The notes: generated from the letters alone by a model not told the origin. Shown: positions 5,354 to 52,340, counted from the first letter of the stretch. The stretch: 64,000 nt of DNA from IMGVR_UViG_3300020473_001965:1-64000; one strand, 5' to 3'. Translations and numbers: made by a program.

Positions 5354-5720
5354 TGGTGGACCCGGCGGGAGTCGAACCCGCGTCCGCAATAACTTCAAAG
5401 TCGAGTCATTCACAGGTTTGTCTAATTTATTCCCAAATTAGAAAGGTAGCTACAAAATTCCCTTTTCCTATGTAGCCTTGGAAAACCACCTGTTTCCAGG
5501 GTAACCATTCTGATTTTTTATTTTTGCAGGATCTCTACCTGTTATCTTAAGTTGGGTATCAAGGTCTTAAGAAACCCCGTCGAATTAAGCGGCTAAGCGC
5601 TGTTCGTAGTGATAATTGTTGTTGGCAATTAAAGTTTTGAAACCGCGTTTAAGGTCAGCTATTTCGTGCGACCACCTGCACTCTCATTCTCCACTACCCC
5701 GTCGAAGCCGTTTCGGGCCC
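5354..5720 (-). ncRNA. ssrA: tmRNA; tag (A)ANNNYHYEQRLAA at 5585-5626
   Basis: 5' GGGCCCG pairs with 3' CGGGUCC-ACCA with G3.U Ala determinant; T-loop GGUUCGACUCC; tag ORF ends LAA-stop. Confidence 0.95.
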
Positions 5721-9399: not shown

Positions 9400-11331
9400 T
9401 CAAGAATCGCGCCAGAGGTTGTTGCTAGCATACGTTAGAATTTCTTCAGCTGACTCAGGTGTGTAACCGTATTCATCAATCATGGTCTGAACCATCTCAT
9501 TATACTTCTTCTGCTGATCATCATCCCTTGATTTGCTCTTTGTGACGACACGCGCAAGATCTTTAATAGAGGTCATGAGATATGATTCAATCGCTTCTTT
9601 TAGTGGCGCGTAACTTGTATAGTCGATTCGCTCTTTTCTTCTCATTTTAGCAAACATATACGCTGTAACGTCTGACCTAAAACCATCCCGAGCAGAACCT
9701 GTAATACCGATTGTCTCTTCTATTGCACGCATGAAGTTTTCATCAGGATCCATAGATTCTTTTGTAACTCGATTCTTCATGCTCTGCTTAGTTGTAAAAG
9801 CCTCAGCATTATCTAGATAAGTGTCAAATAGTGACTGTGCTTGCTCTTCGTAAGCAGTAACAAATGCTTTTGCAATTTCATTCTCAAGCATTTTTAAGTA
9901 CTCTTCTCTGATCACTTTTCTTAACAGTTCTAAGCAGTGTGCCCTGAATTCTGCATCGATTAACTGCTCGTTAACTTGTCTGATAAGTGAATTCATCACT
10001 GAGATGGGTGTGATCATTTCGTTTTCTGAATCACTCAAGGCATTGTCTACGGCTTTCATTATAAACCTTGTAGAAATACCATTCATTCCCTCGTCTCTTG
10101 ACTCATCTCTCAGATCTTTAATGTCTACCTTCTTGACCCTGCCCTTTTCAATTACGTCTTCGCCGTTATAGATCTTCATTTTCGTCATAGGATCGCACTT
10201 CTGGCTTGTGTGAAGCCTAGAAAGGACAGAGAACATTGAGGCAATTCTCAGTGTGTGAGGTGCAATGTGCGCATTAAAGTCAGATCTTGAAAGAATCTTT
10301 TCATAAATTTTAATTTCTTGATCAAGTTCTAAAACGTACGGAACGTTAATTTTTACTACGCGATCTAAGATAGCTTCGTTTGTATGTTCACTTTGAAATT
10401 TATTCCATTCAGCTTCGTTACAGTGAGCAACAATCACACCGTCGAAGTATATCATATCATGCTTCCCTGGAGATGGAACCCTCTTCTCCTGCGTCGCAGT
10501 GATTATTGTATGGAGAAACTCAATCTCATTTTTGAACACCTCAACTAGCTCTACAATCCCTCTGTTACCTACATTGAAAGCGCCATTAAGGGACAGTACT
10601 CGAGGATCATCTTCAGCATATTTGTCAAGCTTTGAAATGTCTTCTGACCCTATTAGAACAGAAACATCCTGACTGTTTGCATCCATGGGTGGGACTGAAG
10701 CTATTCCTCTTCTAGCCCTTTGAGAAAACGTTGTTTCTTTAACAACAAAATTTTCGTATTCGCGGCCGTACTCTTCAAACAGCAGGTGCCTGGCAACCGG
10801 TGATATGTCACCCTCTATTTTCACACCCAGCAATTCCTCAAACTGGCTTCGAAGCCCCCGGGGTATTAAGTGTAAAGGCTCACCCCTCTGAGGATCACCT
10901 TGTAAATAAAAGTATCTTTCACCATCTAATGCACGCTTAATATGTTCTGTAAGAGCCGACTTACCAGCACCAACTGGACCCATCAAGAGCAATACTTGTC
11001 GTGATTCCTCACCTCTTTTAGATGCAGAGTTTAGAAATCTCATAACCTTGGCAATAACTTTTTCCATCCCAAAAAATTCAGATTGAAAATAATCATATGT
11101 TTTCAATGATTCGCCACCAAATAGTTTGTGACATCTTTCATCATTCTCATTCATCGACTGGACGCCGTGCCCTTCTATTGCTTCTGTAAGACGCTTATGA
11201 GCTAATTTTGCGATAGACGGGTTTTTTCTTATAATCTCTAGATACTCAATAAAAGTACCTTCAAACTTATCATCAGTCTTCTTAGCTCTTTGCTCTTTGA
11301 TTATTTTTAAAAAATCTTTTGATGCAGCCAT
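9400..11331 (-). CDS. prkA: PrkA/YeaG AAA+ serine protein kinase
   Basis: EFFGME, Walker A GPVGAGKS, GNRGIVELVEVFK, NEAILDR, EGMNGISTRF. Confidence 0.93.
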   Translation of the reverse strand: MAASKDFLKIIKEQRAKKTDDKFEGTFIEYLEIIRKNPSIAKLAHKRLTEAIEGHGVQSMNENDERCHKLFGGESLKTYDYFQSEFFGMEKVIAKVMRFLNSASKRGEESRQVLLLMGPVGAGKSALTEHIKRALDGERYFYLQGDPQRGEPLHLIPRGLRSQFEELLGVKIEGDISPVARHLLFEEYGREYENFVVKETTFSQRARRGIASVPPMDANSQDVSVLIGSEDISKLDKYAEDDPRVLSLNGAFNVGNRGIVELVEVFKNEIEFLHTIITATQEKRVPSPGKHDMIYFDGVIVAHCNEAEWNKFQSEHTNEAILDRVVKINVPYVLELDQEIKIYEKILSRSDFNAHIAPHTLRIASMFSVLSRLHTSQKCDPMTKMKIYNGEDVIEKGRVKKVDIKDLRDESRDEGMNGISTRFIMKAVDNALSDSENEMITPISVMNSLIRQVNEQLIDAEFRAHCLELLRKVIREEYLKMLENEIAKAFVTAYEEQAQSLFDTYLDNAEAFTTKQSMKNRVTKESMDPDENFMRAIEETIGITGSARDGFRSDVTAYMFAKMRRKERIDYTSYAPLKEAIESYLMTSIKDLARVVTKSKSRDDDQQKKYNEMVQTMIDEYGYTPESAEEILTYASNNLWRDS

Positions 11332-17895: not shown

Positions 17896-17971
17896 TGGAG
17901 CCACTGATAGGGTTCGAACCTACGACCTGCTGATTACAAATCAGCTGCTCTACCAACTGAGCTACAGTGGC
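17896..17971 (-). tRNA. tRNA-Thr(UGU)
   Basis: Complete cloverleaf, anticodon loop TTTGTAA, encoded CCA. Confidence 0.95.
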
Positions 17972-35834: not shown

Positions 35835-35921
35835 TGGTAGGACAGGCGGGACTCGAACCCGCATGCTCATTCGAGCGAGAGATTTTAAGTCTCTTGTGTC
35901 TACCGATTCCACCACTGTCCC
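35835..35921 (-). tRNA. tRNA-Leu(UAA)
   Basis: Cloverleaf with long variable arm, loop CTTAAAA, CCA. Confidence 0.95.
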
Positions 35922-35927
35922 GAGTTT

Positions 35928-36005
35928 TGGTAGGCTCACCGGGACTCGAACCCGGAACCCGCAGTTTATGAGACTGCTGCTCTAACCTGATTGAGCTATG
36001 AGCCT
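35928..36005 (-). tRNA. tRNA with CAU anticodon, probably Ile2 (alternatively elongator Met)
   Basis: Cloverleaf, loop CTCATAA, AGGCTCA acceptor resembles Ile tRNAs, CCA. Confidence 0.9.
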
Positions 36006-36014
36006 GTAAGATGT

Positions 36015-36130
36015 GAGACACCTGTTTGTTAGTCGATAATAGTTGTATGCGCGTTAATAACCGACTGCTAGGCTGTGCCTCCCTGCGCCCGGGCGAGCGT
36101 TTGTGTCCCTGACCTAATGTCTCCGCCGCC
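36015..36130 (-). ncRNA. Candidate small structured RNA between tRNA-Lys and tRNA(CAU)
   Basis: GAGACA..TGTCTC closing stem, AGTCGGT..ATCGACT; upstream promoter-like ATGAAC..TACGAT. Confidence 0.4.
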
Positions 36131-36177
36131 ACTCTTTATCGTACCGCGCTCCCCGTCAATGTTCATGCCAAAAGTAA

Positions 36178-36253
36178 TGGTGGGCCGTCCGAGACTCGAA
36201 CTCGGAACCTGCGGATTAAAAGTCCGATGCTCTGCCGGTTGAGCTAACGGCCC
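36178..36253 (-). tRNA. tRNA-Lys(UUU)
   Basis: Cloverleaf, loop CTTTTAA, CCA. Confidence 0.95.
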
Positions 36254-36257
36254 GTAC

Positions 36258-36692
36258 GATAGAGTTCCCAGCTTCTCTATCTAGACACAGCCTGTAAAGT
36301 CAGTACTTCGACTACGCTTACGCAACCACGAGATAGCTTACTGCTCGTAAGTCTTACCCACTATCTCTCTGGCCTGTGTCCCCCACTATAAGAAAGAGCT
36401 TTGGTGAGTTGGCACGTATCCCAGTACCCGTTCGCTCACCCTTGTGTTTCGGAAGTGCTCTACCCTCCCGATCTTCGCCGCCCCTCCCTTGTGCACAGGG
36501 AATGGCATTGAAAATGTAAAGTGAAGAGGAGGTAGGAATCCGTTTAGTTCGGCCGAGACATGCGGTTGGTGCATCATGCCTCTCGGTGCCGCGGACCTCT
36601 TGTGACCACCAATACGTCACTCACCGTCAGCTTCTTTGTTCGACGACTGCCGATTCCTACCAGTTCCTCGGACCGCTAAATCCAAGGCCTCT
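36258..36692 (-). ncRNA. Candidate structured ncRNA(s) in the tRNA operon leader
   Basis: Long-range GGTAGGAATC/GATTCCTACC, CCGAGA/TCTCGG, GGTGAG/CTCACC, GACACAG/CTGTGTC and GAGATAG/CTATCTC helices; no credible ORF. Confidence 0.6.
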
Positions 36693-36696
36693 AAAT

Positions 36697-36731
36697 TGTC
36701 AAAGAGCGGAGAGGACCTAATCTTTCGATTC
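36697..36731 (-). promoter_or_regulatory. boxB-like GAAA hairpin plus boxA (CGCTCTTTGACA) antitermination site
   Basis: Resembles rrn leader arrangement; lies between promoter and RNA genes. Confidence 0.6.
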
Positions 36732-36767
36732 CAGACGGCTGAACCATCAGCGCGAGCAGTGTCCTTT

Positions 36768-36808
36768 CCTTACTTTCTTATTCTACCACGTTTGGGGGGT
36801 TTTTACAT
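36768..36808 (-). promoter_or_regulatory. Repeated early promoter
   Basis: ATGTAA-N17-TAGAAT, 41-bp family. Confidence 0.8.
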
Positions 36809-36813
36809 CAAAA

Positions 36814-36890
36814 TGGCACGCCCGATAGGATTCGAACCTATGACCCTCGGCTTAGAAGGCCGATGCTCTATCCAGCTGAGCTACGGGCGC
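36814..36890 (-). tRNA. tRNA-Arg(UCU)
   Basis: Cloverleaf, loop TTTCTAA-type with anticodon TCT, CCA. Confidence 0.95.
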
Positions 36891-44185: not shown

Positions 44186-44923
44186 CTAGGCAGCGTCCTC
44201 TTCGTCGTTCTCGAGAATGCCCATCGTCATCGCGAGGGCGAGGCACGCCTCTTCCTTCTCACGCCGGAGGTTCGCGAGCTTCGACTCATGACGCTCGATC
44301 TCGTCTTGGATTCGCTGGTCGTAGCGATCGGCGCCGCTGTTGCTCTGAAGTCGCTCAGCATTCGCGATCGTCGGGTAGGTCTCCCAGCTGATGCGCATGC
44401 GATCCGGGTCTAGACCCAGCGGGCCGACGAGCATCGCGCTCGCGAGCTGCTCTGCTTCTGCGACGTTCTTTGCCGGAATGTACGCGATGGTACGGTACCC
44501 GCAGCTGATCTCGTAGAGACCGATGACAGTGTCTTCATGACGATGCTGATAGTTGCGCATGTACCTCACGCGGTTGTACACGCGGTCGTCGAGGCGGTTC
44601 TCGCGGCGGACCTTAGCCTTGTACGAGCTCTTCTTGCCTTTGCGGCGCTCCAGCTCATCCGCGTGCCAATCCACCGCATCACTCGAGTTCACGAAGCCAA
44701 GGGCGTGGATCTGATCGAACGTGTAGCCCCAAAGCTGACAGTCGTCATTCTCGTTGACGTACTTGTCGCGGTACTTGTTGTACCGGTCGCACCAGACTTC
44801 TTTTCGGACCACGCGCGGCGGTCCGTGCGGGCTCCTGCCCAGCGTGCCCTTCGGCTTCGCCTGCAACAGGTCGTCAATGATGGCGAATCGGGTCGCGCTC
44901 GGGGTCGGTACGAATGGCTTCAT
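44186..44923 (-). CDS. Hypothetical early protein
   Basis: AAGGAG RBS; GLYEISCGY..YIPAKNVAEA. Confidence 0.7.
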   Translation of the reverse strand: MKPFVPTPSATRFAIIDDLLQAKPKGTLGRSPHGPPRVVRKEVWCDRYNKYRDKYVNENDDCQLWGYTFDQIHALGFVNSSDAVDWHADELERRKGKKSSYKAKVRRENRLDDRVYNRVRYMRNYQHRHEDTVIGLYEISCGYRTIAYIPAKNVAEAEQLASAMLVGPLGLDPDRMRISWETYPTIANAERLQSNSGADRYDQRIQDEIERHESKLANLRREKEEACLALAMTMGILENDEEDAA

Positions 44924-45779: not shown

Positions 45780-45941
45780 AAAAACGCGCGTTACTCCGAT
45801 ATCAATATCCGGGCAACATCCGATATCACCTCCCGCCGGGAACACGGGAAGACGCTGAGCACGCGCGCTGCGACCCTGCGTAAATATTTTGCGCCCCTCA
45901 CCCGGTGCCGCGCGGTGGTGGAGCTCAGACCAGGAGACGTT

Positions 45942-45961
45942 GAAAGTGATAATCATTATCA
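45942..45961. promoter_or_regulatory. Fur-box-like operator
   Basis: GAAAGTGATAATCATTATC is 17/19 to GATAATGATAATCATTATC; perfect TGATAAT-C-ATTATCA. Confidence 0.7.
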
Positions 45962-45969
45962 AAAACTAA

Positions 45970-45987
45970 TGAATGAACATTCATTCA
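45970..45987. promoter_or_regulatory. Perfect inverted repeat TGAATGAA-CA-TTCATTCA (TetR-type operator-like)
   Basis: Seen directly. Confidence 0.55.
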
Positions 45988-46060
45988 CTCACACGTCCGC
46001 GCGGCCCGGGCCACCCATGAACGCACATTCACTCCGGGCCGCGCTAAATGTTGATTCGAC

Positions 46061-46297
46061 TCAGCTCTGCTGATGCTTACGCAAAGGCTCTCGAATCCAG
46101 TCAGTAGCTTCCTTACCGATCGGGAGCCGGCCGAGCACGGGTTCGTGTGTACCCTTAGAGCATGCCAACACCCAGCCGTCGTCGACTAATCCCTTCGCGT
46201 GCTCCCACATAACGTCTGAGTCGTGTGGGCCGATGACGCAACGATACTTCAATTCAACGCTACCTCGCTCAACAAATATTACTGTCCAAATCAACAC
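46061..46297 (-). CDS. Hypothetical protein
   Basis: GAGGTG RBS, GTG start. Confidence 0.5.
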   Translation of the reverse strand: MLIWTVIFVERGSVELKYRCVIGPHDSDVMWEHAKGLVDDGWVLACSKGTHEPVLGRLPIGKEATDWIREPLRKHQQS

Positions 46298-46784
46298 TCA
46301 CCTCAATAAAATTAATTTTTGCCCACCCTGAACCCGTGCCACTTTATCGGTCGAAACCGGTGCACACCACGCCACTACTTCGCTCGGGGGATGAGCTTCA
46401 GTGCACGCCAAACGTCGATGCCCGAGGGTCACCGCGAAACCTCCTACTCTTTATCTTACCGCAGGGAGCGACAGTGTACACTTTGCGAGTCTTTTTTTAT
46501 TTTTACAACAAAAACGTGTACAATATGTGAGCCCGGGCTAAGTACGCTAGTCCCCCGATTCCCGTCAGTTTTCGACCTGTCAATGCGTACGCTGACCCGA
46601 GTACTCGCGGAGGGGGCGTGTCGAGGGCTGCTCTACGGGCTACCATGCGTGGCCATTTAGCCACGTGCCATTGATCATGGGGAGTACCCAAGTCCGCTTT
46701 TTTAGAGTGTACGAAAAGCCCGGGCAAAAGTACCTCTGGTCGACGAAGAGAGAGATAGCCCTCGTTACCCAATGCTAGTGCGCG

Positions 46785-46995
46785 AGTAACGGGTCGTCGA
46801 CGAGTAACTTGCGGGCATTAGTTACTTGCGGGCCCGAGGAAAAGTTACTTGCGGGCAGGGCGCAAGCGCGAGCAAAGCTGGGCACAAGTTACTCGTCGTC
46901 TGAGGAAAAGTTCGAGGAAAAGTAACTTGTCGAAGGGTCGCGTGTCGTTCCCTCTCTATACGAGTATGAGTACGAGGACGAGTTACTTGTCGTCC
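46785..46995 (+). repeat. Cluster of AGTWACTTG repeats; three carry the extended CGAGGANNAGTWACTT motif
   Basis: Copies at 46803, 46820, 46843, 46887, 46921, 46981. Confidence 0.8.
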
Positions 46996-47015
46996 CCCAC
47001 TCTCTTCCTTTCTCT

Positions 47016-47756
47016 CTATAGCGTTTCTTGTTTTTTGCCGCCGTGATTGGGCCGGAGTCGGGCTGTTAGCTTGACGTCTCGGCTGATCACTGTCTTGCCT
47101 CGGGTGTTGGGCATGGTCGTTAGCTTGAACTCCTCCCACACGTCTTCTCGATAGAGGATGATCGGGTCCTGCCCCTTGAGTCCTGTTCCGTTCCAGTTGG
47201 GTGACTTCATGACCCACTCATCAACGGCCGTCTTGACTCCTTGCTTCTCGCTTTCTTCTCTCTTTGTCGCCTTGTCGTTGCCCTTGTACTCATCCCGATC
47301 CGAGTAGTACAGATCAGTCTCAGCCCACTGCCCGTGATAGTCGTCACAGACTATGATCGACATGGGATGGATCACGGCTTGAATCAGCTCGAGCTCCTTC
47401 ATCACCGTCTTGTAGTTGTGGTCTCCATCGACTAACACAAGGTCGAACTTTGACTTTCTATTTTGATTAAGCTCAAGCCACTCGAGACTGTTAATGTGTT
47501 GAAGGATGACGTCCCTTCCCCTTCTCTCATCGAGCCCAAGCAAGTCAACATGCGCGTACTGTGATAGTTGTTCGATCACTAGCTCACACGGAATGATGTC
47601 GATTCCCACGTAAGTAAAGCCCTTGAACAGGCTCAAGTTATGAATCAGGGGCAATGCAGTCTGCCCTCGATGAACTCCTATTTCTAGTACCTTGGGTTCC
47701 TGATATCCTGCGAGATACCCTTCACATATTGTTTTAACAAAGCCTAAGTATGACAT
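47016..47756 (-). CDS. Class I SAM-dependent methyltransferase (Methyltransf_24-like)
   Basis: VLEIGVHRG, DLVLVDGDH, IVCDDY. Confidence 0.85.
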   Translation of the reverse strand: MSYLGFVKTICEGYLAGYQEPKVLEIGVHRGQTALPLIHNLSLFKGFTYVGIDIIPCELVIEQLSQYAHVDLLGLDERRGRDVILQHINSLEWLELNQNRKSKFDLVLVDGDHNYKTVMKELELIQAVIHPMSIIVCDDYHGQWAETDLYYSDRDEYKGNDKATKREESEKQGVKTAVDEWVMKSPNWNGTGLKGQDPIILYREDVWEEFKLTTMPNTRGKTVISRDVKLTARLRPNHGGKKQETL

Positions 47757-47819
47757 GACTAGATTATACAGAGTCTGTGTTTTCTTGTATTGATTCTAAC
47801 GAGAGAATATTTACTTTAT

Positions 47820-48569
47820 ATGAGCACGTGGGAAGAGCTAAGCGAGAAACACAGTCCGATCGTCTGGCTTCCCACACGTGAGACTTGGCACACATGTCGC
47901 TGTCGATACTATGTACACATTCCCAAGACAGGAGGCAAGATGTTTCGATCACATGGCACGCCTGACTTCGGTAGTCGGGGTTTCGAGTTCAGCCGCAAGC
48001 ACGTGTGGGACCCGCGAGTAACTTATCCAAAACAGGGCGCAAGTTACTTTTCAACTGTTCGCAACCCATACGATTGGCTCATTAGCATGTGGTTCTACAA
48101 TTGGGGTGAAAAGGTAGGTGCAGGCCCTCAGGACATGTACCTGTCTCTTGAACACTTCCTTTATGACTTTAACTCCCCTAAGCTGACGGGCAAGAACCAG
48201 TGGGACACGAGAGAGCTTGGCGCGACCAAGCATATCATGTGGCCTCTAAGATACTTTCAACTTGCGCAAACATTCGATCCTTTCGATTCGCCCGGAAGGA
48301 AGGAAAGCTTTGCTTCTTTCTACATCAGGCTTGAACGAATTGATAGTTTTTTTAGAGATGCATGGTCATGGACATCTAAGTCTAAGCCGCCAAAGACTAA
48401 CACATCGAAGCACAACGATTATCGTACATATTACACACCTGACCTCGTTGATCACATAGCCAACTGGAGGGGTCAAGAGCTTTCACTGATGGGTTACGAT
48501 TTTGATGGGCCCAAAGGTCCTGAAGTTACGTTTTCGATAAGAGGTTCTTACTATTATCAGCCTGAATGA
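47820..48569 (+). CDS. Sulfotransferase family 2 protein
   Basis: HIPKTGG, VRNPYDWLISMW, NTS, MGYDF. Confidence 0.85.
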   Translation: MSTWEELSEKHSPIVWLPTRETWHTCRCRYYVHIPKTGGKMFRSHGTPDFGSRGFEFSRKHVWDPRVTYPKQGASYFSTVRNPYDWLISMWFYNWGEKVGAGPQDMYLSLEHFLYDFNSPKLTGKNQWDTRELGATKHIMWPLRYFQLAQTFDPFDSPGRKESFASFYIRLERIDSFFRDAWSWTSKSKPPKTNTSKHNDYRTYYTPDLVDHIANWRGQELSLMGYDFDGPKGPEVTFSIRGSYYYQPE

Positions 48570-49348
48570 TCTGGAATGATAAAGGGGCATGTGACTTTTA
48601 TCGCCCGATAATCGTCCATGGGCCCATCAAAATCATAACCAAGCATGTGAAGCTCTTGTCTTCGAAACTCGGATATCACACTTATCATCTCGACATCGTA
48701 AAAGTCCCGATAGTCACGCCTCTTTCTTACTTTTGACCGATTAAGCCATAAGACTTCCTCTGTCTCTTGATCACCTCGGAGATAACGTATCACTTCATCT
48801 AAGTGTTCGAATCGAATGTAAAAGTCAGCAAAGCTGTGGGAAAGCAATCTCTTTTTTTTGAAAGACTGGAACGTCTGCCATGTCTGGAGATATCGAAGAG
48901 GCCATCGGGCGTTGTCCCAACCCCTCGCTGACTTCCTATTCCAGTACGTCATTTGAGTCGGACCGGGTTGATGCATGTCCATGATGAAGTCTTTGAAACT
49001 CGGGTATGAGCCGCGGATTCCAGCTTGACCCCATGGCCCGTGAAACCACATGCTCAACAGTAAGTCGTATGGGTTTCTGATACATGAGAAGATTATGTGC
49101 CCTTCCGGGCGTGCTTTGCACCAGTCATGATTTGTCTTGCTAACATATGATCGCTTACCTGTAACATGATTAAAGATAGACTCGAGTTCTTTAGATATCG
49201 TGTGCCCTGCCGTCTTGTGTATGTGCACGAACATGTTTTTCTTCGGCCCGCACAACAGAGCGTAAACTTCTGCCATCGGTACTTCTAAGGGAAAACCTCC
49301 TGTTGTGGATGCTCCACTATCTCTGACTAACTCATAAAATGTGCTCAT
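48557..49348 (-). CDS. Sulfotransferase family 2 protein
   Basis: HIHKTAG, IRNPYDLLLSMW, IRFE, LGYDF. Confidence 0.85.
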   Translation of the reverse strand: MSTFYELVRDSGASTTGGFPLEVPMAEVYALLCGPKKNMFVHIHKTAGHTISKELESIFNHVTGKRSYVSKTNHDWCKARPEGHIIFSCIRNPYDLLLSMWFHGPWGQAGIRGSYPSFKDFIMDMHQPGPTQMTYWNRKSARGWDNARWPLRYLQTWQTFQSFKKKRLLSHSFADFYIRFEHLDEVIRYLRGDQETEEVLWLNRSKVRKRRDYRDFYDVEMISVISEFRRQELHMLGYDFDGPMDDYRAIKVTCPFIIPDHSG

Positions 49349-49354
49349 GTTTAG

Positions 49355-49591
49355 TTACTCGTCGCCATCGTCACCGATAGCTTCAACTGGGCATGACTCT
49401 AGAGCCTCATAGCACTGGTCTAGTTCCTCGTCGTTCTCGGGTTGCTTGTACACGATATCATGATCCTCGTCATCACTTATGCGAAAGTTATTGGGCGCGC
49501 AATCAGAACAGACGGAGCAGATGATGCACTCCCGATCGACGTAGAATTTTCCGGGGACGTTGTCTTCCCACTTATCGTTTTTATCTGCCAT
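49355..49591 (-). CDS. Single-cluster ferredoxin
   Basis: CIICSVCSDCAP...CPVEAI. Confidence 0.9.
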   Translation of the reverse strand: MADKNDKWEDNVPGKFYVDRECIICSVCSDCAPNNFRISDDEDHDIVYKQPENDEELDQCYEALESCPVEAIGDDGDE

Positions 49592-49617
49592 GTAGATATC
49601 TATCGAGCCTTCGAGGA

Positions 49618-50370
49618 TTAGTAACTTGTGAGAAGTTTCGGTGCATGTGATGCATCGAACTCAAATGGAACATCTATGACAAATGTTTCATATTCGTCGA
49701 CCGGCCCTTCGATATCGTAGCCCAACATGTCCAGCTCTTGTCGGCGCCACTGTTCGATGTGATCAATCAAATCAGTTGTGTAATAAGACCTGTAATCTTT
49801 GTGGGCAGAAGCATTCTTTTTTTTCAGATTGTCGACACCCAACCACGTACCGAGCTTCTCCAGGCGAACATAGAAGTCAGCAATGCTATAAAACTTACCT
49901 GTCTGCCTGAAAGGCTCGAATGTTTGAGCCATCTGAAGATGCCTTAGCTGCCAGCTAATGTAGTCACCCATGTCTGCGGGCCCATCCCAAAACTCATTCT
50001 TGACTATCTCGTCTGAATTGAATCGAAAGAGAAAGTCCTCCAAGTTTTTAAAGACATCTCGAACACCCGGATACTTTTGATTCCCGGGCCAGCTATAGTG
50101 CCACATACTTATGAGCCAAGAATAGGGATTCCGAACTGTTGCGAAGTAGGGACCGTCATTCGGATTATACATTGGACTAGTCGAGTGCATGGTTGTTCGC
50201 GGTCGTAGTACACTCTTTAATGTGTTCCCGCCTGTCTTGGGAATGTGCACATAAACGTGATGATCGATATCGTTTGGAGGTCTGTTCACCGGTGATCGAT
50301 TGGGTACCCAGCTGGGTTGATACTCAAGCTTTTCTGCCAGCTCTAAGAATGTGCTATGCTTGCTTGACAT
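49618..50370 (-). CDS. Sulfotransferase family 2 protein
   Basis: HIPKTGG, VRNPYSWLISMW, NAS, LGYD. Confidence 0.85.
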   Translation of the reverse strand: MSSKHSTFLELAEKLEYQPSWVPNRSPVNRPPNDIDHHVYVHIPKTGGNTLKSVLRPRTTMHSTSPMYNPNDGPYFATVRNPYSWLISMWHYSWPGNQKYPGVRDVFKNLEDFLFRFNSDEIVKNEFWDGPADMGDYISWQLRHLQMAQTFEPFRQTGKFYSIADFYVRLEKLGTWLGVDNLKKKNASAHKDYRSYYTTDLIDHIEQWRRQELDMLGYDIEGPVDEYETFVIDVPFEFDASHAPKLLTSY

Positions 50371-50749
50371 CTAGGCTCTTGTCCAATCGGGCAATCTCAT
50401 CCAAGCTTTCGAGGATTAGTAACTTAACGTCATTGTTAATCTGTACGCTTTTCATCTTATGCCGCGCGGCTTCAGTCCAATATCCCTTCACTTCGATGTA
50501 GAGATCGTGATCTGGGAGATAGAAGTCAGGGATATAGTTCCGGACTCTGCGTGACCTCGTGATGTACTTTAACTTAAGATTTGGGTTGCGTATCCACTTG
50601 ATTCCCAATTCATCCAGCCTCTTCGCACAAGCCACCTCCCACGTGCTATCCATCGAGACAGTTGTCCCTTCAACTGTGACATAGTCCGATCGCTTACTCC
50701 AAAGCTTGAATCTTCTCCTGCGACCTCTGTTTCGTTTTCTTCGCGTCAT
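50354..50749 (-). CDS. PD-(D/E)XK endonuclease
   Basis: STWE..YIPDFYL..IEVKG. Confidence 0.8.
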   Translation of the reverse strand: MTRRKRNRGRRRRFKLWSKRSDYVTVEGTTVSMDSTWEVACAKRLDELGIKWIRNPNLKLKYITRSRRVRNYIPDFYLPDHDLYIEVKGYWTEAARHKMKSVQINNDVKLLILESLDEIARLDKSLDVKQA

Positions 50750-50857
50750 GCGTATAAATAGGCTCCCAAATGTTGAACCAGTGCGTGGACGCCCGAGGAC
50801 AAGTAACTTGTCGGAGGGTCGACACGTCACAACTACACTGTGAGTCCGGCGCCGGCG

Positions 50858-51586
50858 CTAGCGTATATTTGAAACACTGCAATTAGTTATGTTATATGAC
50901 TCTGTACGAAAAGATTCTGAGAAAGTATAGTAGAAATAATTGGTGTCTTTTGTTACACCCATCCACTCACATAGTGCGTCAATAAAATCTGGGCGCTGAT
51001 GGTTTCCCTTCTTTATTTTCTTTGCTGTATTCTTCCTAAAATCTACTCTTTCTCGAGTGTTGTCTTTTGAGTGGTCAACAGGGAGCATATAATAGTCTGC
51101 TTCCCAAAAGTCTAGTCCTGCAACGATAACGTTGTCATAGAAAAAAGATGCATAGCATATTGCACGCAATCCTGTATCCGGATTCTCGTTCCAGAGATAA
51201 TCAAAACTCTTATTCTGGTCCGGGAGAATAGACTTGTCTATGTTGTAATACGCGTGGTTCGCCCTTATATCTTTTATATTATATCTTCTTATCGGTTTGT
51301 TCGTAGGGTAGGGGGTACGTTCTCCGAAGCGAAACTGTCGGTCACCAAGACTTGTCAAGAAGTTTGTTGTTTTCCCTGAGCGCTTTCCTCTTTCTATTAT
51401 AGATGTAGGGAACTGACCCTCCCAATCATTTACAACAATCAAGTCTGTTTCTGGGTGCTTCTCCGCTAAAGCAATTCCATCTTGGGCGCTAGCGCCTCTA
51501 CATAAAATTATGACTGAGTTTTCACAAACAACCGGAGTTGTACCGAATGCATAAGATCTAGCTAGCTCTCGAAAAGTCGACGACAT
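50858..51586 (-). CDS. Sialyltransferase/MAF(DUF115)-like protein
   Basis: ILCRGAS, VVN, TGLRAI, VAGLDF pattern. Confidence 0.55.
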   Translation of the reverse strand: MSSTFRELARSYAFGTTPVVCENSVIILCRGASAQDGIALAEKHPETDLIVVNDWEGQFPTSIIERGKRSGKTTNFLTSLGDRQFRFGERTPYPTNKPIRRYNIKDIRANHAYYNIDKSILPDQNKSFDYLWNENPDTGLRAICYASFFYDNVIVAGLDFWEADYYMLPVDHSKDNTRERVDFRKNTAKKIKKGNHQRPDFIDALCEWMGVTKDTNYFYYTFSESFRTESYNITNCSVSNIR

Positions 51587-51587
51587 G

Positions 51588-52340
51588 TTACTTGCGCTTG
51601 CCTAATATAAAACCCCATGGACGGAACTGAGATAGTGTGTTGCCGTCGATCTCTTCGATATCTCGTGTGTCTCCTACACCCCAGTCACATACTTTCAAAT
51701 CTTTGTCGTGAAGTATCCAGACAAGTAACTTGCCGGGGTCGCCCGCCATTGACTGAGCCAGATCATTTACACAGTCAGCTAATGAGTCATATGCATAGTG
51801 GCGCTCGTGACGATATCCATTTGATCTGCGATTCCAGTTGCCTACGTGATAAATCTTAGATGTGCCGTTGTGGGGTTCTGCCCAAACACACACCATGTGT
51901 CCAGGAAAAGATGGCTTCCATCCCCACTTGAGCTCACTATCTTTGACGGCAATTACTGATAGTAGCATGGGAGAGTGCTGTTCGCCTATTGAGTTTGCGA
52001 GGTATCGAGCGTAGTCGTCGCAGTCCATTGGGCCGTCTGTATCATAGTCTTCTCCGCACTCCATTGCACGAATTCTATTTTCAATCACGCCCGGTGGGAG
52101 GCAGACATCGCCTAGCTCTCGCTTGCCGTCGGGAACGTATGGAAGTTTGAGCACCCGTTCTAAAGGAATGTGTATGTCTTCATCATCGTAAATCTCAGGT
52201 TGATATCTTCTTGTCGCTCTATCTACGTAGATAAAAGCGTATAGATTTGCCCATATTAGATAAATTTGTGTTGCAGGACCGAACCTCATTAGAGTTCTGG
52301 CACCCCACTCATATATTCTTCTCATAATGTCTTTTAACAT
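51588..52340 (-). CDS. Transglutaminase-like Cys protease-fold protein
   Basis: DCDDYA..GHMVC. Confidence 0.55.
   Translation of the reverse strand: MLKDIMRRIYEWGARTLMRFGPATQIYLIWANLYAFIYVDRATRRYQPEIYDDEDIHIPLERVLKLPYVPDGKRELGDVCLPPGVIENRIRAMECGEDYDTDGPMDCDDYARYLANSIGEQHSPMLLSVIAVKDSELKWGWKPSFPGHMVCVWAEPHNGTSKIYHVGNWNRRSNGYRHERHYAYDSLADCVNDLAQSMAGDPGKLLVWILHDKDLKVCDWGVGDTRDIEEIDGNTLSQFRPWGFILGKRK

What the first reader, a model, noticed from the sequence alone, without database searches (positions are those of the whole stretch)
46785..51745. Polar 16-bp motif CGAGGANNAGTWACTT clustered at the island edge and trailing into coding DNA
Six exact copies, all in the same orientation, at 46835, 46913, 46973, 49612, 50410 and 50794; the 50410 copy lies inside the nuclease ORF. 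Core-only AGTWACTT copies occur at 46803, 46820, 48017, 48042 and 51724. The 46913 and 50794 copies extend to about 29 similar bases. I did not notice the full motif elsewhere in the window. Density decaying from a focus suggests iterons, parS-like loading sites, or directional terminase or translocase signals.
Basis: partly seen in the sequence, partly recalled or inferred. Interest (0 to 1): 0.73.

Follow-up and report, generated by a model that had tools for sequence, protein, structure and literature searches.

The report
Polar boundary repeat in jumbo phage
A short one-directional DNA repeat marks every gene boundary in one strain-variable stretch of an uncultured marine T4-like giant phage and piles up in the adjoining non-coding spacer; it most likely binds a protein and doubles as a point where gene cassettes are swapped, but that function is inferred, not shown.

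Summary
The window is the first 64 kb of a 235,672-bp marine T4-like jumbo myovirus record. The 16-mer occurs six times, all on the + strand, and nowhere else in the genome. It is the core of a roughly 20-bp asymmetric repeat that reads SRCA-AGTWACT-YKTCSTCR in the gene direction. About 14 copies exist, all between 46,795 and 51,735. A position-weight-matrix (PWM) scan finds nothing comparable in the other 230 kb.

- **Orientation:** 12 of 14 copies follow the strand of the local gene.
- **Placement:** one copy sits at each of five successive gene boundaries. Six or seven more form an array in the non-coding spacer, 300-540 bp upstream of a conserved sigma70-like promoter.
- **Conservation:** one diverged relative (proteins 27-88% identical) has the same motif in the same place.
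- **Strain variation:** natural strains differ by a 1-kb ferredoxin + sulfotransferase cassette. That difference begins 2 nt past the copy at 49612.

Best reading (about 0.35): a lineage-specific protein-binding boundary or operator element that also acts as a recombination linker, working like the promoter-terminator cassettes (PeSLs) of T4-type phages without their composition. A T4 oriE-like iteron origin remains a live rival. I found no support for parS, terminase or translocase signals.

The parts
46780..46992 (-). Dense array of the repeat in non-coding DNA. Copies lie at 46973, 46913, 46879 (inverted), 46835, 46812 and 46795, with a half-copy near 46780. Start-to-start spacings are 60, 34, 44, 23, 17 and 15 nt.
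   Evidence: It is the only repeat-bearing non-coding gap in the genome.
46540..46779 (-). Rest of the spacer. It holds degenerate GTACT-type half-copies, a conserved hairpin (CGTGGC/GCCACG, 46648-46667) and a conserved TTGACAGGT block (46575-46583).
   Evidence: Read; aligned with the relative L114; coordinates.
46453..46514 (-). A/T-rich tract (46491-46514) followed by a conserved sigma70-like promoter, GTGTACA-N16-TAAGAT (46453-46481). An AGGAGG ribosome-binding site and a GTG start (46430-46445) follow and open the GC-rich gene block.
   Evidence: The same architecture is seen in L114 (GTGTACA-N16-TAGAAT) and L279 (GTGTACA-N16-TATGAT). This is inferred from sequence only.
46061..46297 (-). 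78-aa ORFan, the first conserved gene after the spacer. It and the 245-aa ORF at 44186-44923 are found only in the two phages that carry the motif.
   Evidence: No family or fold assignment.
47016..47756 (-). SAM-dependent methyltransferase (Methyltransf_24). Its stop codon lies 24 nt before the first array copy.
48012..48056 (+). Two copies (48012, 48037) inside the + strand sulfotransferase-like gene 47820-48569, both in + orientation.
   Evidence: Conserved in strain L384.
49349..49368 (+). Inverted copy at the ferredoxin/sulfotransferase-B boundary. The core supplies the ferredoxin stop codon.
49612..49631 (-). Copy that overlaps the stop codon of sulfotransferase C (49618-50370) and ends 20 nt before the ferredoxin start codon. 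Strain variants diverge 2 nt past its 3' end.
48578..49609 (-). Strain-variable cassette (ferredoxin 49355-49591 plus most of sulfotransferase B, 48557-49348). Other strains have 17 nt here, carrying most of a 9-bp-stem hairpin.
   Evidence: joint 48577/49610 in run X4; L381, L382, L384, L385; Fer4_13; phrog_3347.
50410..50429 (-). Copy inside the 3' end of the endonuclease gene (50354-50749), ending 39 nt before the sulfotransferase C start codon. It shares about 33 similar nt with the 49612 copy.
50794..50813 (-). Copy in the 108-nt gap between the 242-aa ORF and the endonuclease gene. It is a paralogue of array copy 46913 (28 nt, 93% identical).
51578..51597 (-). Copy with one core mismatch. 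It contains the stop codon of the 250-aa ORF and the start codon of the 242-aa ORF.
51716..51735 (-). Copy with the extended 5' flank, inside the coding sequence of the 250-aa ORF (51588-52340).

Best explanation
The 16-mer is the core of a lineage-specific asymmetric repeat of about 20 bp. The repeat belongs to one hyperplastic (strain-variable) accessory-gene stretch of a marine T4-like jumbo phage.

**Proposed mechanism**
1. Each copy is a binding site for a sequence-specific DNA-binding protein. The core AAGTWACTT is palindromic, which suggests a dimer. The 3' extension YKTCSTCR makes the site directional.
2. Single copies at gene boundaries, and the array between the variable stretch and the next operon's promoter, act on transcription in an orientation-dependent way. 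This would be operator- or 'stoperator'-like insulation or shut-off.
3. Because the same 20-35 nt recur at every boundary, they also serve as portable homology. Cassettes are gained, lost and swapped at them, as PeSLs allow in T4-type phages.

**Shown:** the distribution, the orientation, the boundary placement, conservation in a diverged relative, paralogy of the flanks, and one strain-level breakpoint at a copy.

**Inferred:** protein binding, any effect on transcription, and the identity of the binding protein.
For: - **Restricted distribution.** The repeat is unique to 46.8-51.7 kb of 235 kb.
- **Boundary placement.** All five successive co-directional gene boundaries carry a copy, and the array follows the last gene.
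- **Orientation.** 12 of 14 copies follow the gene strand, including both copies in the + strand gene.
- **Conservation.** The relative G001/L114 has proteins 27-88% identical. It carries 12-14 copies, all in the syntenic place and none in the rest of its 35 kb. Five of the six window array cores align to cores in the relative: 35 of 42 core columns are identical, against 46% in non-core columns.
- **Regulatory context.** A more distant cousin (L279) has a different short repeat, TGTGACA-N4-TGTCA, in the same spacer upstream of the same conserved promoter. So this spacer carries short repeats that differ between lineages, as regulatory sites would.
- **Recombination.** Strains diverge immediately after TCCTCGAA of the 49612 copy. 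Several independent assemblies break there.
- **Variable stretch.** Contig depth is 1.3-2 times lower over 47-52 kb than to the left of the array.
- **Copy-paste spread.** Copies fall into subfamilies that share flanks beyond the motif.
Against: - No DNA-binding protein was identified. Neighbouring ORFs have no HTH or RHH match. The only co-occurring ORFans (78 aa and 245 aa) have no assignable fold.
- The strong array copies lie 300-540 bp upstream of the promoter, which is far for a classical operator.
- Only one of the two strain-level indels has an end at a copy. I estimate the chance of such a coincidence at roughly 4%.
- Only two phages carry the motif, and MAFFT tends to anchor an alignment on the repeats, so the core-conservation figure may be inflated.
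- No transcript data could be obtained.
- Several copies lie inside coding sequence, where codon constraint could help preserve them.
Confidence: 0.35

Rival explanations
1. T4 oriE-like replication origin. The array would be a set of iterons bound by a phage initiator next to a promoter whose transcript primes replication. The dispersed copies would be by-products of recombination.
For: - The phage is T4-like (gp23-type capsid protein).
- T4 oriE has a cluster of direct 12-nt repeats, conserved in syntenic regions of relatives, and depends on an early-type promoter (PMC3016281).
- Here there is one array per genome, with same-direction repeats, an adjacent A/T-rich tract and a sigma70-like promoter.
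- A small lineage-specific gene lies directly downstream.
- The array lies beside one of the few stretches of the genome with + strand genes.
Against: - Spacing is irregular (15-60 nt), not evenly phased.
- The A/T-rich tract is only 24 nt long.
- There is no GC-skew inflection.
- No recognisable initiator is present, and the replication genes lie 40-120 kb away.
- This reading does not explain copies at every gene boundary in gene orientation.
- Even in T4 the repeats have no proven link to origin activity.
Confidence: 0.2
2. A short interspersed repeat with no function of its own. It would be a REP- or MITE-like selfish element, or scars of repeated insertions into a repeat-rich spacer, and would matter only as recombination homology.
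For: - Subfamilies share 25-35 nt of flank, which indicates copy-paste rather than independent selection.
- Copies occur inside three coding sequences.
- A breakpoint lies at a copy.
- One strain has a core mutation that merely lengthens the upstream ORF by 10 aa.
Against: - The motif family and its location persist between phages whose proteins are only 27-88% identical, while the sequence between copies has decayed to about 46% identity.
- No Y1/RAYT transposase, integrase, resolvase or HNH_3 endonuclease was found.
- There is a strong orientation bias.
Confidence: 0.2
3. A promoter class for a phage-specific RNA polymerase or sigma factor: mobile promoters that drive each accessory gene.
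For: - The copies lie 0-60 nt upstream of start codons and are co-oriented with the genes.
- The phage encodes a sigma70-family factor with regions 1.2, 2 and 3.
- At the ferredoxin copy, GTTACT-N17-TAGATA precedes the ATG by 5 nt (sequence).
Against: - No -10-like element lies at a fixed distance across the copies.
- The motif is absent from the other 230 kb, where a phage sigma would need promoters.
- In the array, seven copies within 210 bp would fire into one another.
- In the strains that lack the cassette, the 49612 copy faces the end of a convergent gene.
Confidence: 0.1
4. A packaging (pac/terminase), partition (parS) or translocase-orienting signal.
For: A clustered, polar, repeated site in non-coding DNA resembles cosB/pac repeat sets and the arrays of direct repeats in type Ib/II plasmid partition centromeres. 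This rests on my own knowledge.
Against: - No ParB was found.
- The terminase gene lies at 210.7-212.4 kb.
- T4-type phages package by headful without a strong pac site (general knowledge).
- The motif is not genome-wide, so it cannot orient a translocase.
- No read termini could be examined, because only contigs were available.
Confidence: 0.05
5. Recognition sites for a strand-specific nicking system, as in phages T5, phiKMV and tf.
For: In those phages the sites occur on one strand only. The tf consensus TACT/RTGMC and the phiKMV consensus CGAC-N5-CCTA/CTCCGG share short words with this motif (PMC3517423).
Against: - Known nick sites are spread along the genome, not stacked 15-60 nt apart.
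- The resemblance does not align in register.
- No nick data are available.
Confidence: 0.03

Closest known systems
PeSLs (promoter-early stem-loop cassettes) of T4-type phages (PMC2839356, PMC4122927)
   Same: - The host is a T4-like phage.
- It is a short conserved element repeated at intergenic sites of a hyperplastic region.
- The sequence is lineage-specific.
- Insertions and deletions between close strains end at the element, so it works as portable homology for cassette shuffling.
   Different: - A PeSL is a strong sigma70 promoter plus a terminator stem-loop. Here no consistent -35/-10 pair or hairpin accompanies the copies.
- PeSLs occur in many hyperplastic regions of a genome. This motif occurs in only one.
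- No PeSL array filling a spacer has been described.
Stoperators of mycobacteriophage L5 (gp71 repressor sites). This comparison is from my own knowledge and was not checked in a paper here.
   Same: - The site is asymmetric and short.
- It lies in short intergenic gaps or overlaps start and stop codons.
- It is oriented with the direction of transcription.
   Different: - L5 sites are spread over the whole genome of a temperate phage and have a known repressor.
- Here the sites are local, the phage looks lytic, there is an array, and no binding protein is known.
Iterons of T4 oriE (PMC3016281) and of iteron plasmids
   Same: It is a cluster of same-direction short repeats in a T4-type genome. 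The cluster is conserved in position in a relative, lies beside an early-type promoter and precedes small lineage-specific genes.
   Different: - Spacing is irregular.
- Extra copies lie at gene boundaries in gene orientation.
- No initiator gene is evident.
- There is no compositional switch.
Integron attC cassette arrays
   Same: The genes are co-oriented, each is followed by a copy of an imperfect palindromic site, and a cassette indel starts right at a site.
   Different: - No integrase is present.
- The motif does not fit the attC core and inverse-core sequences.
- The sites are about 20 nt long, not 57-141 nt.

Membership tests
PeSL (T4-type mobile regulatory cassette) | Contains a sigma70-like early promoter (-35, N17, -10) | tested here: not met
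   The consensus scan found no promoter at any copy. Aligned copies show no -10 element at a fixed distance.
PeSL (T4-type mobile regulatory cassette) | Contains a terminator stem-loop | tested here: not met
   Only 2 of about 12 copies (46847-46867 and 50809-50824) have an upstream hairpin. The minimum-energy folds show no common structure.
PeSL (T4-type mobile regulatory cassette) | Intergenic location within a hyperplastic region | tested here: met
   Copies lie at five successive gene boundaries. The stretch varies between strains and has lower contig depth.
PeSL (T4-type mobile regulatory cassette) | Indel end-points between close genomes lie at the element | tested here: inconclusive
   One replacement (1,032 nt against 17 nt) starts 2 nt after the 49612 copy. 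A second deletion, in L386, does not end at a copy.
PeSL (T4-type mobile regulatory cassette) | Mini-circles formed by recombination between flanking elements | not testable with these tools
   This needs inverse PCR or raw long reads.
Iteron-type replication origin (T4 oriE, plasmids, lambda) | Three or more direct repeats, same orientation, regular helical spacing | tested here: inconclusive
   Six of the seven array copies share one orientation. Spacings are 15, 17, 23, 34, 44 and 60 nt.
Iteron-type replication origin (T4 oriE, plasmids, lambda) | Adjacent A/T-rich unwinding element | tested here: inconclusive
   The only A/T-rich tract is 24 nt long, at 46491-46514.
Iteron-type replication origin (T4 oriE, plasmids, lambda) | Cognate initiator gene nearby | tested here: not met
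   No Rep-like family is found in the flanking ORFs. The 78-aa ORFan is uncharacterised.
Iteron-type replication origin (T4 oriE, plasmids, lambda) | Compositional skew switch or origin activity | tested here: not met
   Cumulative GC skew is monotonic over the whole 235 kb. Origin activity itself cannot be tested here.
parS / partition centromere | ParB or another centromere-binding protein and a partition ATPase are encoded | tested here: not met
   No ParB_N match in the genome, which is about 87% complete. No search for a partition ATPase was run.
pac / cos terminase recognition site | Genome termini or packaging series start at the site | not testable with these tools
   Only Logan contigs were available, so no read ends could be seen. 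TerL lies at 210.7-212.4 kb.
Translocase- or recombinase-orienting polar signals (KOPS, Chi) | Genome-wide, strand-biased distribution | tested here: not met
   All copies lie within 5 kb of 235 kb.
Stoperator-type dispersed operators | Asymmetric site at gene junctions, oriented with transcription | tested here: met
   12 of 14 copies follow the gene strand, and five of five junctions are occupied.
Stoperator-type dispersed operators | Cognate repressor that binds the site | not testable with these tools
   No candidate with a DNA-binding domain was found. The complex-prediction job was not folded and gives no evidence.
Integron cassette array | Tyrosine recombinase IntI and attC core / inverse-core sites | tested here: not met
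   No Phage_integrase or Resolvase match. By inspection, the motif does not fit GTTRRRY / RYYYAAC.
Localised nick sites (T5, phiKMV, tf) | Single-strand breaks at a one-strand consensus dispersed along the genome | not testable with these tools
   No virion DNA data are available. The clustered distribution is unlike that of tf, which has 14 sites on the top strand of its 46-kb genome.

The most novel reading that the evidence does not exclude
The array is a gene-capture platform. It would be a landing pad of directional recombination sites from which a T4-like jumbo phage grows its accessory-gene island one cassette at a time. Each insertion would leave a site copy at the new boundary. The result would be integron-like in outcome, but with no known recombinase: either an unrecognised enzyme or the phage's own recombination machinery acting on 20-35-nt homologies.
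Probability: 0.12. Interest if true: 0.8.

Novelty: new variant of a known kind. Interest (0 to 1): 0.5.

Why it matters
Hyperplastic regions are where large phages keep their auxiliary metabolic genes, and how those genes are gained and controlled is poorly known outside T4 and its enterobacterial relatives. This locus pairs a conserved, directional boundary motif with a strain-level cassette polymorphism that starts exactly at a copy, in a phage present in many ocean metagenomes. If the motif binds a regulator, it defines a compact regulon plus insulator in an uncultured jumbo phage. If it is mainly a recombination linker, it extends the PeSL idea to an element of quite different composition. 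If it marks an origin, it would give the long-unexplained T4 oriE repeats a testable counterpart.

Tried and rejected
- **Collection scans for the motif.** A scan of IMG/VR for the 17-mer gave 98 single, scattered matches, apart from the relative's contig. A metagenome scan with two conserved spacer blocks gave 61 chance hits and no array.
- **Relatives found through proteins.** Sulfotransferase C and the 78-aa ORF gave nothing. The endonuclease and the MoxR ATPase gave about 85 loci, and only one contig (G001) carries the motif.
- **Decayed gene in the spacer.** tblastn of the neighbouring proteins against the spacer gave nothing significant.
- **Known RNA or tRNA.** None in 44-56 kb. The copies share no common RNA fold.
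- **Standard promoters and terminators.** Counts match those in shuffled sequence.
- **Mobilising enzymes.** No integrase, resolvase, Y1 transposase or HNH_3 endonuclease. One small GIY-YIG gene lies far away at 83.5 kb.
- **MotA-type activator.** No match, but the control genomes did not match either, so this says nothing.
- **Binding test.** The complex-prediction job with the 78-aa protein and motif DNA was not folded and gives no evidence.
- **Larger contig.** The genome search could not reach the 296-kb ENA contig.
- **Phage GenBank search.** A near-identity search of the region found nothing.


Full report
**What the window is.** The window is bases 1-64,000 of a 235,672-bp IMG/VR virus record rated about 87% complete. 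A 296,665-bp ENA contig carries the same locus, so the genome is probably larger. The phage encodes:

- a gp23-type major capsid protein, portal, large terminase and two tail-sheath paralogues;
- a DnaB-like helicase, a DNA polymerase, ribonucleotide reductase and GroEL;
- a sigma70-family factor.

Its capsid protein is closest to those of uncultured jumbo phages, Microcystis phage Mel-JY01 and Flavobacterium phage immuto, at 35-46% identity. It is therefore a distant T4-like jumbo myovirus. By a simple ORF call, 261 of 311 genes are on the minus strand. Many marine metagenomes from several studies hold the region.

**Checking the observation.** All six exact copies are real. All are on the + strand, and none is expected by chance. 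They are the only copies in the whole genome. The 28-nt similarity between the 46913 and 50794 copies is 93%.

I built a 20-column position weight matrix (PWM) from the six copies and scanned the genome. Every hit above 13 bits lies between 46,795 and 51,735. The new sites are 46795, 46812, 46879 (inverted), 51578 and 51716. Weaker sites lie at 48012, 48037 and 54570. Hits of 8-13 bits elsewhere are as frequent as in shuffled sequence. A copy at 49349 was found by its core. The 8-mer cores outside 46.8-54.6 kb share no flanks and sit inside unrelated coding sequence.

**Anatomy.** In the direction of the genes (minus strand) the consensus from 24 copies in two phages is SRCA-AGTWACT-YKTCSTCR. 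The core AAGTWACTT is palindromic, and the 3' extension makes the site directional. Twelve of 14 copies point the way the local gene is transcribed. This includes the two copies inside the only + strand gene of the stretch; two copies are inverted.

The genes, in order of transcription, are:

| Gene | Coordinates | Evidence |
|---|---|---|
| 250-aa ORF | 51588-52340 | no family |
| 242-aa ORF | 50858-51586 | no family |
| DUF790 / endonuclease-I-like nuclease | 50354-50749 | |
| sulfotransferase-like C | 49618-50370 | |
| 4Fe-4S ferredoxin | 49355-49591 | |
| sulfotransferase-like B | 48557-49348 | |
| sulfotransferase-like A (convergent, + strand) | 47820-48569 | |
| Methyltransf_24 methyltransferase | 47016-47756 | |

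The three sulfotransferase-like genes are paralogues, 33-41% identical. Each of the five boundaries from the 250-aa ORF to sulfotransferase B carries a copy: 51578, 50794, 50410, 49612 and 49349. Three of these contain the stop codon of the upstream gene.

Past the methyltransferase stop codon, six or seven copies fill 46780-46992. GTACT-type half-copies continue to about 46540. No other non-coding gap in the genome has such repeats.

**What follows the array.** The rest of the spacer holds, in order:

- a conserved hairpin (46648-46667);
- an A/T-rich tract (46491-46514);
- a sigma70-like promoter, GTGTACA-N16-TAAGAT (46453-46481);
- an AGGAGG ribosome-binding site with a GTG start.

This opens a long minus-strand block that is richer in G+C (48-60% against about 41% for the genome). 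The block encodes a 78-aa ORFan, a MoxR-type AAA ATPase, a DUF2201 metallopeptidase/VWA protein, a KaiC/RecA-like ATPase and four tRNAs. The promoter is my reading of the sequence. It recurs with the same geometry in two relatives.

**Relatives.**

- **G001.** One IMG/VR contig (G001, also fetched as L114, L277 and L377-378; 35 kb) is syntenic with 19-62 kb of the genome, with proteins 27-88% identical. Its order is nuclease, two motif copies, one sulfotransferase-like gene, then a 400-bp spacer with about ten same-direction copies, the same hairpin and promoter, and the MoxR block. All of its copies lie within 1.2 kb and none in the other 34 kb.
- **Core conservation.** In a pairwise alignment, five of the window's six array cores fall on cores of the relative. 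Of 42 core columns, 35 are identical, against 46% identity and many gaps in the other array columns. The aligner will tend to anchor on the repeats, so this shows conservation of the family more safely than conservation of each position.
- **More distant cousins.** These share the nuclease (55-77% identical) and MoxR (44-58%) in the same order but lack the motif. One cousin (L279/L280) has a different short repeat, TGTGACA-N4-TGTCA, in three or four units in the same spacer upstream of the same promoter.
- **Co-occurring genes.** The 78-aa and 245-aa ORFs are found only in the two motif-bearing phages among about 60 related loci. Neither has a family or a telling fold. Because the two phages are each other's closest relatives, this co-occurrence is weak evidence.

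**Strain variation.** Logan contigs of four runs were laid on 46200-52100. A strain 95-99% identical (run X4) skips 48578-49609 and has 17 other letters there. Contigs carrying variants of sulfotransferase C show three forms:

1. **Window form.** The motif copy is followed by ferredoxin and sulfotransferase B.
2. **Short form.** The same copy ends in TCCTCGAA and is followed at once by a 9-bp-stem hairpin and the end of the convergent sulfotransferase A (L381, L382, L384, L385).
3. **Second deletion (L386).** This form has the short-form junction and lacks sulfotransferase A as well. A T-to-C change in the core removes the stop codon and lengthens the ORF by 10 aa.

The first difference begins exactly at the 3' edge of the copy. 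Four assemblies end within 8-19 nt of that point, as expected where an assembly graph forks. These reflect one polymorphism, not four events. The second deletion does not end at a copy.

Contig depth to the left of the array is 1.3-2 times that over 47-52 kb in three runs. So the accessory-gene stretch, not the GC-rich block, is the variable part.

The 49612 copy and the 50410 copy inside the nuclease gene share about 33 similar nucleotides. The 46913, 50794 and 51716 copies share a 5' flank, GACCCTYCGRC. Several others share GCCCGC. The copies therefore spread by duplication of 25-35-nt pieces and were not each selected independently.

**What it is not.**

- **Assembly artefact:** independent assemblies span it.
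- **Known RNA, tRNA or decayed gene:** none found.
- **Standard promoter or intrinsic terminator:** not supported.
- **Genome-wide polar signal:** no; all copies lie within 5 kb.
- **Bidirectional origin or terminus:** cumulative GC skew falls steadily across the genome with no switch.
- **Mobile element with its own enzyme:** no integrase, resolvase, Y1 transposase, HNH_3 endonuclease or ParB was found.

**Most likely mechanism.** I take the repeat to be a protein-binding boundary element. Four features point to a site read by a protein in relation to transcription:

- a palindromic core with a directional extension;
- one copy per gene boundary, oriented with transcription;
- a high-density array between the variable stretch and the next operon's promoter;
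- persistence across deep divergence, while a cousin carries a different repeat in the same spacer.

This would resemble dispersed operators or the stoperators of mycobacteriophage L5 (my own knowledge). The better-supported second role is that of a recombination linker. The same 20-35 nt at each boundary give T4-type recombination a place to exchange cassettes without breaking genes, as shown for PeSLs (PMC2839356, PMC4122927). The element works like a PeSL but is not one, because the defining promoter and stem-loop are missing.

**Rivals.** The main rival is a T4 oriE-like origin. T4 oriE also has a cluster of direct repeats, conserved in relatives and of unproven role, beside an early-type promoter (PMC3016281). 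That reading fits the array but not the boundary copies. A functionless interspersed repeat, a phage-sigma promoter class, packaging or partition signals, and strand-specific nick sites (PMC3517423) are less likely, for the reasons given under each.

**Limits.**

- Only two phages carry the motif.
- No transcript or read-end data could be obtained, because the runs are held as contigs.
- No binding protein is identified.
- The one complex prediction was not folded and gives no evidence.

Confidence in the best explanation is therefore modest, about 0.35.

Noticed in passing
window 25000-47000: A block of minus-strand genes at 48-60% G+C in a genome of about 41%. It holds MoxR, DUF2201/VWA, a KaiC-like ATPase and four tRNAs. 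The G+C rises and falls gradually and peaks at 42-46 kb. The corresponding loci of relatives are also G+C-rich (L277 0.52, L279 0.50, L286 0.64).
   Followed up: partly
window 5354-5720 (-), 17896-17971, 35835-36890: A phage-borne tmRNA gene (tag ANNNYHYEQRLAA) and five tRNA genes (Thr, Leu, Met, Lys, Arg).
   Followed up: no
window 9400-11331 (-): A PrkA/YeaG-like serine kinase (phrog_22605). Its homologues are in Thermus phages, Ralstonia phage RsoM2USA and huge uncultured phages, at about 30-33% identity.
   Followed up: partly
window 47754-47770 (-) and 47785-47822 (+): The divergent methyltransferase and sulfotransferase A genes each have a -10-like hexamer (TATAAT, TATTTA) 6 nt before the ATG and no ribosome-binding site. 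Ferredoxin has TAGATA 5 nt before its ATG. Leaderless mRNAs may be common in this stretch.
   Followed up: no
window 47016-50370: An accessory-gene island: three sulfotransferase-like paralogues (33-41% identical), a 4Fe-4S ferredoxin and a CmcI-like methyltransferase. Further on lie a HAD phosphatase, an M10-like peptidase, a 4HBT thioesterase and ThyX (54.8-57.8 kb).
   Followed up: partly
L384:1874-1910; L386:3500-3540: Strains that lack the ferredoxin cassette have a perfect 9-bp-stem hairpin (TCAGGAATT / AATTCCTGA) between the convergent sulfotransferase genes. It looks like a bidirectional terminator and is absent from the window's form.
   Followed up: partly
L279:4180-5510: A cousin phage has about seven tandem paralogous small genes, each starting with the peptide M-K-V-G-D-L-V and with overlapping stop and start codons. 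They lie where the window has its accessory genes.
   Followed up: no
window about 45900-46010: Three independent assemblies (L389, L391, L392) end 200-250 nt upstream of the 150-aa ORF. An inverted repeat (TGAATGAATGTTCATTCATT) lies close by. This may be another point of strain variation.
   Followed up: no
G000 100985-101746 (-) (L009:985-1746): A phage-encoded sigma70-family factor with regions 1.2, 2 and 3 but no detected region 4.
   Followed up: partly
L379 (ENA contig of 296,665 bp): A longer contig carries the same locus, identical over the array. The 235-kb IMG/VR record is therefore probably missing about 60 kb.
   Followed up: no
window 50747-50759 (+): TATAAATA, the T4 late-promoter word, lies on the + strand just upstream of the nuclease start, pointing away from that gene. 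It may be chance.
   Followed up: no
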